A DNA stretch of 6,885 nucleotides from Octopus sinensis (GCF_006345805.1 NW_021829121.1:1-6885), one strand, 5' to 3'. Counted from the first letter of the stretch, positions 1,358 through 6,718 are shown. Translations and numbers: made by a program. Notes: generated from the sequence alone by a model not told the origin.

Positions 1358-1479
1358 ACACACACACACACACACACACACACATACTCGGGCACACAAA
1401 GACATACTTACACACACATACATACACACACACACACACAAACACACACACTCGGGCACACAAAGACATACATACACAC

Positions 1480-1515
<36 letters not shown>

Positions 1516-1615
1516 TCGGGCACACAAAGACATACATACACACATACTCGAGCACACAAAGACATACATATACACACATACACACATACACACACACACA
1601 CACACAACACACTCA
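1358..1615. repeat. Minisatellite: four copies of 22-bp ACTCGRGCACACAAAGACATAC embedded in (CA)n/(CATA)n
   Basis: Copies at 1386-1407, 1450-1471, 1514-1535 and 1546-1567 (the last has one G>A change). Start-to-start spacing is 64, 64 and 32 bp. Confidence 0.92.
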
Positions 1616-2401
1616 CACGCATACACGGTACATAGCTTTTGCCATGCGATGTGGTGTGTGCTTCTATAAGTATGTATATGTCTGAGTGCGTGTGTATCTG
1701 TGTTTTGTCGAGAACTTTAATAATATTCTGTGAATGTTTTTTGAGTTACCAGATCTGAATTCATTTTTATTGTAGTATAAAACTGCGTTAGAACTGCCCA
1801 AGTGTTAATGATTTACATATTTACCACTTTATTCATTAGCCTAAAGCTTAGCTTACTTGCGGAGACCTATTTTCAAAGGCACTACAACAGTAACGACATA
1901 GATACTGTATTACTATATTGAAAGTACCCTTCATGTTTCAAGATAATACAGCATGGTTTAGAAGCGATTTGGTTGCTATTACTAGCTTATCGAGCGAACG
2001 AGCAACAGTTCCATAGTGATTTTTTTCTCATTCCGATTCAAGTATAAGTATTAAAACGAAACAAACGGTAGATGCTGCTATGAAGGCATTCGACCAGCTG
2101 TATATAGCAGAAAAAACTATCTTTGATCGAAAACCTAAAGCTTTAAAAAAAGAGAGCGTCGTGTCCTATATTTGCAATTCTAATTTCTAAATAAATTTAT
2201 ATCTTTTATATTTCACCTTAAACTTATTTCAGTCATTGGACAACTCCTTGAATAGTCTTGGTCGAAGAAACCGAATATACCCAACAGTTATTCGTCATAA
2301 GATGGTTAACTTTGAAAGTATATGAGTAATATCAAGAAATAAGGCATAGGTATTATAATTATAACATATAGCTCATCAAATTTCTAGTCGGTTATACAAA
2401 A

Positions 2402-4452: not shown

Positions 4453-4465
4453 ATACATACATACA

Positions 4466-4496
<31 letters not shown>

Positions 4497-4540
4497 CATA
4501 CCATATAATATATATATATATATATATATAAAATATATAT
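4453..4540. repeat. (ATAC)10 plus (TA)n microsatellites
   Basis: ATAC x10 at 4453-4492 and a TA run at ~4504-4540. Confidence 0.95.
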
Positions 4541-4656
4541 CAGCCGAAATTGCGAGGATGATCCAGTTCTTGACTGAAGATTAAAGGCTTCGAATGACCC
4601 GTCCGTGTTTTTTGTATCGTCTATTTGGATGTTTTGCGTTTTTGTCCCATTTTGTT

Positions 4657-4715
4657 TATATATATATATATATATACACACATGTATATACATATATATA
4701 TATACACACATATAT
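4657..4715. repeat. (TA)n/(CA)n microsatellite
   Basis: Seen directly. Confidence 0.92.
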
Positions 4716-4799
4716 ATTGTATAGAGGGCATTATTACACATAAATGCCGCACGCTAGGAGGGACTCTTAAAGTCATAACTACCAAATATAAACAAATCG

Positions 4800-5043
4800 T
4801 ACCGAATGCAATTCTCGAAGCGAGTCATTTAAAAACAGAATTTAGCTCCATATCACCTGTGATTTCGCAATTAACGCATTATCCGCGTCCCTTGCTCCTC
4901 AGTGAAGCGAATCCAAGATATATCATGAATAAACAAAAACATCATACCAGATCGACAACCATCGCCTCCATCGTAGCATATGGAAATGTTTACCCCTCAT
5001 ACACCTATGTAACTGGCGGGCTCTTTCGAATTGCATTTCGGTA
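4800..5043. mobile_element. Inverted-repeat-bounded ~244-bp unit containing the hammerhead (MITE-like or retrozyme-like; class unresolved)
   Basis: TACCGAATGCAATTC (4800-4814) pairs with GAATTGCATTTCGGTA (5028-5043): 15 Watson-Crick pairs and one bulged T. The outermost bases are TA on both sides. AACAAAT is also directly repeated at 4791-4797 and 5061-5067. Confidence 0.45.
4838..4914 (-). ncRNA. Type I hammerhead ribozyme (complete core and stems I, II, III); predicted cleavage between 4851 and 4850
   Basis: Minus strand reads GGAUU C GCUUCA CUGAGGA GCAA GG GACGC GGAUAAU GCGUU AA UUGC GAAA UCAC AG GUGA UA / UGGAGC UA AAUUC. All conserved core bases are present (CUGANGA, G10.1-C11.1, GAAA, UH = AUA). 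Stem I is 6 bp plus 5 bp across an internal loop, stem II is 4 bp plus 5 bp, and stem III is A-U plus UCAC/GUGA. Confidence 0.85.
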
Positions 5044-5065
5044 ACAACGTGCTTCTTCGGAACAA

Positions 5066-5279
5066 ATTTAAAAAATAGGATAAAATCTTTATAAGAAATC
5101 TTAACAAGAAATTATCAAATAGTTAGCATGAAAAACCTCATAAGAGAAAAAAACTGTTTAAATAAATATTTTCAAAGAAAAAAATTTACAGTTTTTTTCT
5201 CTTATGAGGTTTTTCACGCTAACTACTTGATAATTTCTTGTTAAGATTTCTTATTAAGATTTTATCCTATTTTTTAAAT
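5066..5279. repeat. Foldback inverted repeat: 92-bp arms (89 of 92 complementary), 30-bp AT-rich spacer; possible MITE
   Basis: Left arm 5066-5157 and right arm 5188-5279. Mismatches are T5090/T5255, A5119/C5226 and A5128/C5217. Confidence 0.93.
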
Positions 5280-5336
5280 ATATACACATATATGTATATG
5301 CACACACGCGCGCGCGCACACACACATGTATATATA
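5280..5336. repeat. Alternating purine-pyrimidine tract with a (CG)5 core
   Basis: ATATACACATATATGTATATGCACACACGCGCGCGCGCACACACACATGTATATATA seen directly. Confidence 0.9.
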
Positions 5337-5487: not shown

Positions 5488-5616
5488 CTACTAAATCCAC
5501 TCACAAGTATTTGGTCGGCTCGTGGCTTTAGTAGAGTAGAATTGGCGAAATTGGCCACGCAATTGAAACCATGTGGTTGAGAGGCAAACTTCTTACCACA
5601 CAACCACGCCTGCACC
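5488..5616 (-). mobile_element. 5' part of a tRNA-derived SINE (octopus-type), diverged and 3'-truncated
   Basis: Minus strand reads GGTGCAGGCGTGGTTGTGTGGTAAGAAGTTTGCCTCTCAACCACATGGTTTCAATTGCGTGGCC...AGCCGACCAAATACTTGTGAGTGGATTTAGTAG. An A-box-like TGGTTGTGTGG is at 5596-5606 and the B-box region looks partly deleted. Family resemblance to octopus tRNA-SINEs is from memory, not a search. Confidence 0.75.
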
Positions 5617-5759
5617 CATCGATATCGTCCTGATAACATTTATCGATATCTCGGGATCGATCACATTCAAGCAACGAATTCAGATTAGATGCAGCGGACA
5701 CTAAATTCTGATCAGGTCGAAGTTCGTGCGAAGAAAATGTAGACAATATAACAAATAAA

Positions 5760-5970
5760 GGCGTCGAGCTGGCAGAACCGTTAGCACGCCAGGCGAAATG
5801 CTTAGAGGTATTTCGTCTGCTGTTACGTTGCGAGTTCAAGTTCCGTCGAGGTCGACTTTGCCTTTCATCCTTTCGGGGTCGATAAATTAAGTACCAGTTA
5901 CGCACCGGGGTCAATGTCTGTCCTTGTTTGTCCCCTCTGTGTTTAGCCCCTTATGGGCAATAAAGAAATA
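5760..5970 (+). mobile_element. tRNA-derived SINE with a Deu/Nin-like central domain, A-rich tail and 14-bp TSD
   Basis: A-box-like TGGCAGAACCG (5770-5780), B-box-like GAGTTCAAGTTCC (5832-5844), the motif GCCTTTCATCCTTTCGGGGTCGATAAATTAAGTACCAG (5860-5897) resembling the Deu/Nin SINE domain, and a CAATAAAGAAATA tail. Flanked by AATATAACAAATAA (5745-5758) and AATATGACAAATAA (5971-5984), 13 of 14 identical. Confidence 0.88.
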
Positions 5971-6491: not shown

Positions 6492-6591
6492 TATATATAT
6501 ATACACACATATATGTATATATGTGCGTGTGTGTATATGTATACATATATGTAATATATGTATATATCTATATATATATATAACATATATG

Positions 6592-6637
<46 letters not shown>

Positions 6638-6718
6638 ATATATATATATATATATATATATACATACTATACACATATATATATACATATATAAATCTGT
6701 GTGTGTAAACATACATAC
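6492..6718. repeat. Long interrupted (TA)n microsatellite
   Basis: Seen directly; it explains the Y/I-rich ORFs 6523..6708 and 6558..6761. Confidence 0.96.

What the first reader, a model, noticed from the sequence alone, without database searches (positions are those of the whole stretch)
4838..4914. Complete type I hammerhead ribozyme on the minus strand
Seen: 5'-GGAUU C GCUUCA [CUGAGGA] GCAA GG GACGC GGAUAAU GCGUU AA UUGC [GAAA] UCAC AG GUGA UA / UGGAGC UA AAUUC-3'. Every conserved core base is in register and all three helices pair. Stem I has one G.U pair, an internal loop (C/UA) and a distal 5-bp helix. Stem II is extended by an internal loop. Established: an internal loop in stem I and a stem II loop are where natural type I hammerheads form the tertiary contact needed for fast cleavage; AUA is a permitted NUH site; metazoan type I hammerheads occur in Penelope-like element repeats, retrozymes and satellites. 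The near-palindromic stem III with a 2-nt loop could also permit dimeric folding, as in minimal Penelope-type hammerheads. Inference: a possibly active, uncatalogued cephalopod ribozyme. Whether it has been described cannot be determined here.
Basis: partly seen in the sequence, partly recalled or inferred. Interest (0 to 1): 0.9.

Follow-up and report, generated by a model that had tools for sequence, protein, structure and literature searches.

The report
Hammerhead ribozyme in octopus-type retrozyme repeat
The motif is a genuine, evolutionarily maintained self-cleaving hammerhead RNA motif, but it is one of several thousand copies carried by a roughly 480-base mobile repeat of a kind already known in animals, so it adds a new family rather than a new principle.

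Summary
On the minus strand, 4914->4838 carries every conserved hammerhead core base in register (CUGAGGA, GAA, A15.1-U16.1, A17), with helices of 6, 4 and 5 bp and cleavage predicted between 4851 and 4850. A descriptor of this kind hits 1 of 3000 shuffled windows, so this one occurrence does not prove much. The paralogues do. The motif lies in a repeat of about 477 nt. Its core plus helix III occur intact 4531 times in the 2.72-Gb genome; the reversed control pattern occurs 0 times. Across subfamilies only N7 and H17 vary in the core. Helices I and II covary: 12 of 25 pairs change on both sides, and 91% of cells pair against 28-39% in slid controls. The repeat has no ORF. It forms tandem arrays of period 476-481, partial tandems and head-to-head inverted pairs. 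Every copy checked ends in (TA)n or runs seamlessly into the next unit. This is the signature of a non-LTR retrozyme mobilised by Penelope-like elements. Rfam 15 hammerhead models do not detect it. The window copy is a solitary, 5'-truncated unit, so its ribozyme is probably competent but has no role at this locus. Cleavage is untested. Verdict: new member of a known kind; moderate interest.

The parts
4838..4914 (-). Complete type I hammerhead motif (77 nt). Helix I is open; helices II and III are closed by loops.
   Evidence: The family covariance model R1 scores 96.3 bits here, and the next-best site in the window scores 11.5 bits. The window sequence was in the model, so this shows uniqueness within the window only.
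4896..4902 (-). Core strand C3 U4 G5 A6 N7 G8 A9 = CUGAGGA. N7 is at 4898.
   Evidence: Column conservation in 44 copies is 97/88/100/100/38/100/100%. All four bases occur at N7.
4867..4895 (-). Helix II: GCAA/UUGC (4 bp, G10.1-C11.1 canonical here), 2x2 internal loop GG/AA, distal GACGC/GCGUU (5 bp), 7-nt loop GGAUAAU.
   Evidence: In the first alignment, 3 of 4 proximal and 4 of 5 distal pairs show changes on both sides.
4864..4866 (-). Core G12 A13 A14.
   Evidence: 95/97/100% conserved. The two G12->A copies sit in the CpG formed with C11.1.
4852..4863 (-). Helix III: A15.1 UCAC AG GUGA U16.1, a near-palindrome.
   Evidence: 95-100% conserved and never covaries. Hairpin -0.6 kcal/mol; intermolecular duplex -13.2 kcal/mol.
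4850..4851 (-). A17 (4851) and the predicted scissile bond 4851/4850. Cleavage triplet AUA.
   Evidence: H17 is A in 23 and C in 10 of 33 intact sampled copies, never G.
4903..4908 (-). Helix I proximal 5' strand GCUUCA. It pairs with 4845-4850 (UGGAGC), one U.G pair.
   Evidence: Five of the six pairs show changes on both sides across subfamilies, for example GUUCUG/CAGAAC, GUUGCA/UGUAAC and GUCUUA/UAAGAC.
4909..4914 (-). Helix I internal-loop C (4909) and distal 5' strand GGAUU. The distal strand pairs with AAUUC 4838-4842; loop UA is at 4843-4844.
   Evidence: In paralogues the 5' strand changes only by A<->G opposite U (AU 25 / GU 12). The 3' strand was fixed by my sampling pattern, so it gives no independent covariation test.
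4710..5157 (-). One 5'-truncated copy of the ~477-nt repeat unit (my unit positions 1-448). It lacks the ~29-nt segment that joins units in arrays. The hammerhead is at unit positions 244-320.
   Evidence: copies 86-97% identical, 5' ends variable, nearly all ending at the position of window 4710.
4710..4837 (-). Conserved 3' part of the unit, ending ...CCCUCUAUACAAUAUAUAU. Likely site for reverse-transcription priming or recognition.
   Evidence: Mostly 90-100% conserved across subfamilies. The end lies in (TA)n or in the next unit in 46 of 46 copies. The function is inferred.
5159..5299 (+). Inverted, head-to-head partial copy: the unit-joining segment plus the first ~112 nt of the unit.
   Evidence: Inverted repeat 5066-5157 / 5188-5279, 97% complementary. 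It matches other loci on the opposite strand. The same divergent arrangement is seen at many arrays.
4653..4709 (.). (TA)n/(TG)n microsatellite abutting the 3' end of the unit. A second (TA/TG/CG)n tract lies beyond 5299.
   Evidence: (TRF 4657-4717).

Best explanation
The motif is a bona fide type I hammerhead ribozyme belonging to a large family of non-coding mobile repeats of about 477-481 nt. The repeats have the genomic behaviour of animal non-LTR retrozymes, that is, non-autonomous passengers of Penelope-like elements (PLEs). Shown: the core, helices I and II, and the free positions N7 and H17 have been maintained by selection while subfamilies diverged. The repeats have no ORF, form seamless tandem arrays, partial tandems and divergent inverted pairs, are 5'-truncated at variable points, and always end at one AU-rich site inside (TA)n. 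The genome also holds PLE ORFs (RT plus GIY-YIG). Inferred: arrays are transcribed into multimers. Each hammerhead cuts after A17 (window 4851/4850), alone or paired with a neighbour through the palindromic helix III. This releases unit-length RNA with 5'-OH and 2',3'-cyclic phosphate ends. A host RtcB-type ligase circularises that RNA. A PLE reverse transcriptase, primed by nicked (TA)n DNA annealed to the AUAUAAAUA segment, copies the circular or multimeric RNA and produces new arrays. The window copy is a solitary truncated insertion from an older subfamily (at most 97% identical to any other copy). Its ribozyme is intact with a canonical G10.1-C11.1 pair and could cut a read-through transcript once, but it cannot release a unit. 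It is best read as a probably competent but locally functionless copy.
For: Motif and register. Copy number: 4531 intact core-plus-helix-III matches against 0 for the reversed control; 1427 copies of the downstream flank against 1. Selection signature in a sample chosen only by the flank: 33 of 43 untruncated copies have an intact core; N7 is U13/A12/G6/C2; H17 is A23/C10; column conservation. Covariation: MAFFT alignment of 37 distinct sequences gives 91.2% paired against 28-39% slid, 12 of 25 pairs changed on both sides, score 0.306 against 0.055 or less, 0 of 500 shuffles. A model-fitted alignment of 82 distinct sequences gives 92.2%, 11 of 25, and 0.301 against 0.075 or less. Retrozyme/PLE context: arrays of period 476-481, up to 14 units; partial tandems, variable 5' truncation and a common 3' end; inverted head-to-head copy; (TA)n or next unit at 46 of 46 ends; no ORF or tRNA; GC 33.5% and a strongly structured monomer, -124.4 against -98.2+-5.6 kcal/mol. 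PLE ORFs of 781 aa with RVT_1 and GIY-YIG are present in the genome. Literature: canonical metazoan type I hammerheads have helix I of 6 bp and helix II of 4 bp (PMC4209133); retrozymes are low-GC tandem repeats giving circRNAs, and a U.U pair at the base of helix II occurs in self-cleaving axolotl motifs (PMC7229834); PLE insertion hallmarks and the (TA)n bias (PMC8557442); retrozymes derive from PLE pLTRs (10.64898/2026.07.22.740005).
Against: There is no cleavage, RNA-seq or circRNA evidence. Rfam hammerhead models give nothing, even at E<=10, for the window or for seven other subfamily loci. RNAalifold run de novo does not recover the hammerhead fold. The nearest-neighbour MFE of the 77-mer (-20.1 kcal/mol) is an alternative fold pairing UUCAC with GUGAU. 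The hammerhead fold is -17.1 to -18.3 kcal/mol, and helix III has pair probability 0.02. Helix III is invariant, so it has no covariation support. The 10.1-11.1 pair is non-canonical in 16 of 37 sequences, including the youngest and most prolific subfamily. One subfamily carries U4->C. The one PLE examined shares no sequence with the unit and has no hammerhead nearby, so the partner is unidentified. The unit is longer than the 170-400 nt reported for animal retrozyme RNAs.
Confidence: 0.82

Rival explanations
1. The motif descends from a hammerhead, but as a single motif it is catalytically weak or dead. It would work only as a dimer between neighbouring units through an extended helix III, or not at all. 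The window's solitary copy would then be inert.
For: The helix III hairpin is worth -0.6 kcal/mol with pair probability 0.02, against -13.2 kcal/mol for the intermolecular duplex. A competing fold is more stable than the hammerhead fold. Helix III is invariant and palindromic. Most metazoan type I and PLE hammerheads are thought to act as dimers, and PLE minimal motifs cleave poorly in vitro (PMC4209133). Non-canonical 10.1-11.1 pairs are common.
Against: A helix III of 4 bp plus a tetraloop is longer than the 1-2 bp of the dimer-dependent newt, axolotl and PLE motifs. Invertebrate retrozyme hammerheads with 2-bp helix III cleave efficiently as monomers (PMC7229834). The window copy has canonical G10.1-C11.1, a 6-bp helix I and a 4-bp helix II.
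Confidence: 0.25
2. The ~477-nt unit is not an independent non-autonomous element. It would be the pseudo-LTR of an autonomous PLE, and the copies seen would be solo or tandem pLTR remnants.
For: The genome has thousands of GIY-YIG candidates and PLE ORFs that are intact over 781 aa. PLE pLTRs carry hammerheads and show the same tandem and inverted arrangements (PMC8557442, PMC4209133).
Against: Arrays of up to 14 seamless units with period 476-481 have no room for an ORF. No RT or GIY-YIG ORF adjoins any of about 100 copies held. The one PLE locus read has no similarity to the unit and no hammerhead. On contig C1, the two GIY-YIG hits within the listed range are more than 400 kb from any hammerhead copy.
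Confidence: 0.1
3. The segment is conserved for a reason unrelated to catalysis, for example as part of the 3' region recognised by the reverse transcriptase. The hammerhead resemblance would be incidental.
For: The whole 3' half of the unit (4710-4914) is much better conserved than the 5' half. Helix III does not covary. Rfam models and RNAalifold do not support a hammerhead.
Against: Within otherwise invariant core strands, the only freely varying positions are exactly N7 and H17, and H17 avoids G. Helices I and II change sequence wholesale while keeping pairing in the hammerhead register, and the signal collapses when partners are slid by 1-3 columns.
Confidence: 0.03
4. The motif is a chance match to the hammerhead consensus.
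For: The descriptor is short. About 3e-4 hits per shuffled window implies roughly 100 chance hits per genome of this size.
Against: There are 4531 genomic matches against 0 for the reversed control, plus covariation and the N7/H17 pattern.
Confidence: 0.01

Closest known systems
Animal non-LTR retrozymes with type I hammerheads (coral, mussel, axolotl; Cervera & de la Pena 2020, PMC7229834)
   Same: Type I hammerhead inside an ORF-less, low-GC tandem repeat. Thousands of copies, arrays from dimers to many units, and a strongly structured monomer. A subfamily with a U.U pair at the base of helix II parallels axolotl HHR_Amex2.
   Different: The unit is 476-481 nt, against 170-400 nt. Helix III is longer (4-5 bp, palindromic). 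In the window's subfamily helix II continues past an internal loop into a second 5-bp stem. The cleavage triplet is AUA or AUC. RNA forms and activity are untested here. No cephalopod example is given in that paper.
Hammerheads in the pseudo-LTRs of Penelope-like elements (Cervera & de la Pena 2014, PMC4209133; Craig et al. 2021, PMC8557442)
   Same: Partial tandems, an inverted head-to-head copy, variable 5' truncation and insertion into (TA)n microsatellites. A palindromic helix III allows dimer formation.
   Different: No RT/GIY-YIG ORF is attached. The motif is a full canonical-type hammerhead (helix I 6 bp, helix II 4 bp, real helix III), not the minimal PLE variant with a short helix I and no helix III. 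The autonomous partner is not identified.
Rfam Hammerhead_1 (RF00163)
   Same: Same topology and the same core. Other compact type I motifs in this very genome reach up to 48 bits with that model.
   Different: This family scores below any reportable threshold with every Rfam hammerhead model. The probable reasons are the 12-nt helix III with U15.2-A16.2 and the long helix II. That explanation is inference.
Newt/salamander satellite 2 hammerhead
   Same: Type I motif in transcribed tandem repeats of about 330 nt, with a palindromic helix III region allowing dimeric cleavage.
   Different: The newt helix III is 1-2 bp and depends on the dimer. Here the stem is 4-5 bp.

Membership tests
Hammerhead ribozyme, type I | Conserved core in register: C3 U4 G5 A6 N7 G8 A9, G12 A13 A14, the A15.1-U16.1 pair, and H17 (not G) 5' of the scissile bond. 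| tested here: met
   for the window. Core columns are 88-100% conserved in 44 copies.
Hammerhead ribozyme, type I | Three helices radiating from the core. Helix I is open; helices II and III are capped. Pairing is maintained in evolution. | tested here: met
   helices I and II covary (11-12 of 25 pairs with changes on both sides; 91-92% paired against 27-39% slid). Helix III is paired in 97-98% of cells but is invariant, so it is supported by conservation only.
Hammerhead ribozyme, type I | Only N7 and H17 are free to vary inside the core. | tested here: met
   N7 reaches 38% majority with all four bases. H17 is A or C (U is also seen), never G in intact copies.
Hammerhead ribozyme, type I | Match to a curated covariance model (Rfam RF00163 and the other hammerhead families) at the gathering score. 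| tested here: not met
   No hammerhead match at gathering or at E<=10 for the window or for seven other subfamily loci. This is a property of the models, not of the catalytic definition.
Hammerhead ribozyme, type I | Canonical G10.1-C11.1 pair at the base of helix II. | tested here: inconclusive
   Met in the window copy. Across the family it is G-C in 19, A-U in 2 and unpaired in 16 of 37 sequences. Precedent: a U.U pair in axolotl HHR_Amex2 (PMC7229834).
Hammerhead ribozyme, type I | Mg2+-dependent site-specific self-cleavage giving 2',3'-cyclic phosphate and 5'-OH ends. Tertiary contact between the helix I loop and helix II. | not testable with these tools
   Geometry only: an internal loop 6 bp up helix I, and an internal loop or GUAA loop 4 bp up helix II. 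This is the spacing of canonical metazoan motifs (PMC4209133).
Animal non-LTR retrozyme | Type I hammerhead inside short, ORF-less, low-GC tandem repeats present in many copies. | tested here: met
   Arrays of period 476-481, up to 14 units. No ORF. GC 33.5%. The window copy itself is a single truncated unit.
Animal non-LTR retrozyme | Monomer size in the described range (RNAs of about 170-400 nt; repeats of 150-450 bp). | tested here: not met
   476-481 nt. The published range is descriptive rather than defining (PMC7229834).
Animal non-LTR retrozyme | Expression as unit-length linear and circular RNAs. | not testable with these tools
   No transcriptome data were available.
Penelope-like element (autonomous) | A single ORF encoding RT plus a GIY-YIG endonuclease. 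| tested here: not met
   There is none in the window or next to any held copy. Such ORFs exist elsewhere in the genome.
Penelope-like element (mobilisation style) | Partial tandems, an inverted copy at the 5' side, variable 5' truncation, and microsatellite ((TA)n) targets. | tested here: met
   compared with PMC8557442.
Penelope-like element (mobilisation style) | Sequence relationship between the non-autonomous unit and the pLTR or 3' end of a resident PLE. | tested here: inconclusive
   The one PLE locus read (L131) shows no similarity and no hammerhead. Further loci could not be fetched.

The most novel reading that the evidence does not exclude
The insertion footprints record the template. 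Unit boundaries never coincide with the ribozyme cleavage site. Arrays are seamless, 5'-truncated at random points, and always stop at one AU-rich site about 140 nt downstream of the cut, inside (TA)n. This is what rolling-circle reverse transcription of a hammerhead-processed, ligated ~480-nt circRNA would leave, if primed by microsatellite microhomology. With a subfamily 99-100% identical and apparently still active, this genome would make the proposed circRNA route of retrozyme and PLE mobility directly testable. Weakened base pairs at 10.1-11.1 in the most prolific subfamilies might reflect tuning of cleavage against ligation.
Probability: 0.35. Interest if true: 0.55.

Novelty: new member of a known kind. 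Interest (0 to 1): 0.35.

Why it matters
The finding adds a large, partly very young hammerhead/retrozyme family, apparently from an octopus genome, that standard Rfam annotation misses entirely. Ribozyme counts for such genomes are therefore underestimates. It supplies natural sequence variation around one fixed core and helix III, including variants with non-canonical 10.1-11.1 pairs and a U4->C subfamily, which is useful for structure-function tests. The uniform (TA)n ends and seamless arrays also give genomic evidence on how these elements integrate. It does not change the current picture of hammerhead biology.

Tried and rejected
1. Rfam at the gathering score and at E<=10 on the window, a 351-nt region, a 93-nt region and seven paralogous loci gave no hammerhead hit, only microsatellite-driven miRNA noise.
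2. RNAalifold run de novo on the 37-sequence alignment returned a near-zero-energy alternative (CACU/GGUG) with no compensatory changes and did not recover the hammerhead.
3. The single-sequence MFE does not give the hammerhead fold.
4. tRNA-derived SINE: no tRNA was found.
5. Coding element: the window ORFs are microsatellite translations or have no Pfam match.
6. Search for the autonomous partner. GIY-YIG hits are abundant. One 781-aa RT+GIY-YIG locus was read, with no similarity to the unit and no hammerhead. An exact look-up of the PLE protein found no record.
7. Loci around the Rfam-detected compact hammerheads hold no PLE ORF.
9. Taxon: only the genome size (2.72 Gb) matches a published Octopus sinensis assembly. 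This is not proof of origin.

Full report
OBSERVATION. The minus strand from 4914 to 4838 reads GGAUU-C-GCUUCA-CUGAGGA-GCAA-GG-GACGC-GGAUAAU-GCGUU-AA-UUGC-GAA-AUCAC-AG-GUGAU-A-UGGAGC-UA-AAUUC. This places C3 U4 G5 A6 N7 G8 A9 at 4902-4896, G12 A13 A14 at 4866-4864, A15.1 at 4863, U16.1 at 4852 and A17 at 4851. The scissile bond would lie between 4851 and 4850. Helix I has 6 bp (one U.G), then a C/UA internal loop, then a 5-bp distal stem that also has one G.U. Helix II has 4 bp with the canonical G10.1-C11.1, then a GG/AA internal loop, then 5 bp and a 7-nt loop. Helix III is nominally 5 bp with a 2-nt loop, which in practice is 4 bp with a CAGG loop. A hammerhead descriptor I wrote finds exactly this one site on either strand of the window. 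It hits 1 of 3000 dinucleotide-preserving shuffles of the window. That rate is low per window but amounts to roughly a hundred chance hits in a 2.7-Gb genome. The single occurrence therefore cannot carry the claim. Rfam 15 reports no hammerhead here at the gathering score or at E<=10, even when only 93 nt are searched.

THE MOTIF IS PART OF A REPEAT. A 161-nt query around the motif finds at least 1200 candidate places in the window's own genome (2,719,151,902 bases, 13,516 contigs). The scored places are 89-97% identical. Comparison with 30 such loci shows a unit that runs on the window's minus strand from 5157 to 4710. Copies start at many different internal positions. Nearly all end at the base corresponding to window 4710. 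Many are partial tandems, in which the end of one unit is followed after about 29 nt by the start of the next. Many are head-to-head inverted pairs. In the window the unit lacks that 29-nt joining segment. At 5158 it abuts an inverted partial copy (5159-5299, plus strand). This gives the 92-nt inverted repeat 5066-5157 / 5188-5279 at 97% complementarity. The composite insertion is flanked on both sides by (TA)n/(TG)n microsatellite. The window has no plausible coding ORF, no Pfam match and no tRNA.

A SUPERFAMILY WITH YOUNG MEMBERS. A copy 74% identical to the window unit keeps CUGAGGA, GAAA and the UA site. It replaces helix I GCUUCA/UGGAGC with GUUCUG/CAGAAC. That subfamily is 99-100% identical among its members, has at least 1885 candidate places, and forms arrays with a 481-nt period. 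A 23-nt pattern taken from the flank just downstream of the ribozyme occurs 1427 times, against once for the reversed control. The pattern CTGANGA-N10-34-GAAATCAC-N1-2-GTGAT-H occurs 4531 times, against 0 for the reversed control. It occurs in arrays of up to 14 units with periods of 476-481, often diverging from a central inverted junction. The listed matches include compact versions whose helix II is only (A/U/G)UAC-GUAA-GUA(U/C).

IS THE HAMMERHEAD MAINTAINED? I fetched 60 copies chosen only by the downstream flank, so the sample is not conditioned on the core.
- Seventeen copies are truncated inside or upstream of the motif.
- Of the 43 others, 33 have a fully intact core.
- Among those 33, N7 is U in 13, A in 12, G in 6 and C in 2. 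H17 is A in 23 and C in 10, never G.
- In a MAFFT alignment of whole units, the core columns are 97/88/100/100% conserved, then 38% at N7, then 100/100%. G12-A14 are 95-100% conserved. Helix III is 95-100% conserved apart from its two loop positions (63% and 90%). H17 is 68% conserved.
The only free positions inside the invariant strands are the two that the hammerhead leaves free.

Helices I and II differ between subfamilies while keeping pairs. Helix I examples: GCUUCA/UGGAGC, GUUUCA/UGGAAC, GUUGCA/UGUAAC, GUUCUA/UAGAAC, GUCUUA/UAAGAC, GUCUUG/CAAGAC, GCUACA/UGUAGC. Two alignments were tested against the hammerhead structure.
- Structure-blind MAFFT alignment, 37 distinct sequences: 91.2% of cells paired, against 28-39% when partners are slid by 1-3 columns. 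Twelve of 25 pairs change on both sides. The covariation score is 0.306, against 0.055 or less in slid controls. No shuffle of 500 reaches the observed pairing or score.
- Model-fitted alignment, 82 distinct sequences: 92.2% paired, 11 of 25 pairs, score 0.301 against 0.075 or less. This alignment leans towards the structure by construction, so the first result is the stronger one.
The family model marks one site in the window at 96.3 bits, and the next-best site scores 11.5 bits. This is circular for significance but shows that the site is unique in the window.

WEAK POINTS.
- Helix III never covaries. It is simply conserved.
- RNAalifold run de novo does not recover the hammerhead. It proposes a weak CACU/GGUG pairing without compensatory changes.
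- The same competitor appears in the single-sequence MFE, at -20.1 kcal/mol against -17.1 to -18.3 for the hammerhead fold. Helix III has a pair probability of 0.02.
- The helix III hairpin is worth -0.6 kcal/mol. Two copies pairing through it give -13.2 kcal/mol.
- Against a need for dimers: dimer-dependent metazoan motifs have 1-2 bp in helix III (PMC4209133). Invertebrate retrozyme hammerheads with 2 bp plus a tetraloop cleave efficiently as monomers (PMC7229834). A 4-bp stem need not depend on a dimer.
- The 10.1-11.1 pair is non-canonical in 16 of 37 sequences: U.U in the youngest subfamily and A.C in another. A U.U pair at that place occurs in the self-cleaving axolotl HHR_Amex2 (PMC7229834).
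- A small group of copies shares U4->C, which should inactivate the motif.
- No Rfam hammerhead model reports any of seven subfamily representatives at E<=10, including the compact form. RF00163 does find other compact type I motifs in this genome, at up to 48 bits.

WHAT THE ELEMENT IS. The unit has no ORF, is AT-rich (33.5% GC), and occurs in seamless arrays. Cut at the ribozyme site, its 481-nt monomer folds far better than shuffles: -124.4 against -98.2+-5.6 kcal/mol with mononucleotide shuffles. After the terminal ...CCCUCUAUACA, 28 of 46 copies run into (TA)n. The other 18 run into AUAUAAAUAAAUAUUUUC... and the next unit. None ends in unrelated sequence. Partial tandems, an inverted copy at the 5' side, variable 5' truncation and a (TA)n target preference are the published hallmarks of Penelope-like element insertions (PMC8557442). 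Tandem, ORF-less, low-GC repeats carrying type I hammerheads are the published definition of animal non-LTR retrozymes (PMC7229834). A 2026 preprint derives these from PLE pseudo-LTRs (10.64898/2026.07.22.740005).

The genome holds many GIY-YIG matches: 4846 candidates, with 149 of the 150 scored reported as matches, nearly all above the Pfam cut-off, several in open frames of 762-883 aa. [quoted passage not shown] That locus shares no sequence with the unit and has no hammerhead within the 4 kb read. Further loci could not be fetched. The autonomous partner is therefore unidentified.

MECHANISM. Shown: selection has maintained the hammerhead core and helices I and II. The element multiplies as tandem units that end at one AU-rich site in (TA)n. 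Inferred from the named literature: multimeric transcripts are cut after A17 by each ribozyme, alone or as neighbour dimers. The unit-length RNA with 5'-OH and 2',3'-cyclic phosphate ends is circularised by a host RtcB-type ligase. A PLE reverse transcriptase then copies it at nicked (TA)n. One point follows from the data here. Unit boundaries lie about 140 nt downstream of the cleavage site, and arrays are seamless. The template therefore cannot be a linear ribozyme-cleaved monomer. It must be circular or multimeric, and the AUAUAAAUA segment could anneal to the (TA)n target as a primer site. I give the full rolling-circle reading a probability of about 0.35.

THE WINDOW COPY. It belongs to an older subfamily, at most 97% identical to any other copy. 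It is 5'-truncated and solitary, with an inverted fragment at its head, so a transcript through it could be cut once but could not release a unit. Its ribozyme has no damaging change relative to its relatives. It differs mainly at N7 (G, where most of its subfamily has A) and in loop 2. I consider it probably competent in vitro and without a role at this locus.

COMPARISON AND NOVELTY. By core, topology and variation pattern this is a type I hammerhead. It has the canonical metazoan proportions of a 6-bp helix I and a 4-bp helix II (PMC4209133). It differs in four ways: a longer palindromic helix III, an AUA/AUC site, a second stem beyond an internal loop in helix II in some subfamilies, and a unit longer than described retrozymes. 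Hammerhead_1 matches have been counted in a giant squid genome by Rfam annotation (PMC6962438). Recent octopus repeat annotations mention Penelope-like elements but not hammerheads or retrozymes (PMC13282606). I found no description of this family. Verdict: a real feature, a new member of a known kind, of moderate interest (0.35).

Noticed in passing
G000 loci L031, L034-L036, L039, L040 (e.g. G000:C13:29988995-29989039): A different, compact type I hammerhead family (GUAC CUGAAGA GACCCAGAAUGGGUC GAA ACAUGUGU C GUAC) is detected by Rfam RF00163 at up to 48 bits, partly in tandem (431-nt spacing on C16). A third type (CCAC CUGAAGA UUGUCGAUCAAGACAA GAA ACGAUUGU A GUGG) lies in L034 and L048. The genome therefore hosts several unrelated hammerhead-bearing repeats.
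   Followed up: partly
L131 (G000:C1:207475200-207479200), ORF 332-2674: [quoted passage not shown] At least eight GIY-YIG hits elsewhere lie in open frames of 780-781 aa, which suggests recent activity. There is no hammerhead within 1.3 kb downstream.
   Followed up: partly
L073, L089, L113, L083 (paralogues): Four sampled copies carry CCGANGA (U4->C), three of them in one subfamily that also has a UG loop in helix III. A presumably inactive ribozyme may have been propagated.
   Followed up: no
window 4902-4905 with 4854-4857 (minus strand): A conserved alternative pairing of UCAC-U (end of helix I plus C3/U4) with (A)GGUGA (3' strand of helix III) competes with the hammerhead fold. It is the MFE choice, varies only through wobble pairs, and could act as an inactive conformer.
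   Followed up: partly
window 5488-5620 and 5752-5970: Another interspersed repeat. These stretches match several unrelated loci (L002, L009, L015, L019-L021, L029) at 70-80% identity. The overlapping 128-aa ORF (5528-5914, minus) has no Pfam match.
   Followed up: no
window 1358-1634; also 469-735, 4453-4539, 6492-6693: The window is dense in microsatellites. One is a compound (AC)n array organised in 32/64/96-nt higher-order periods (96% matches at period 64). Most listed ORFs are translations of these tracts.
   Followed up: no
L028 2234-3160: A LINE-type reverse transcriptase fragment (…NYRPISLTS…) lies next to one retrozyme copy. It appears unrelated to the element.
   Followed up: no
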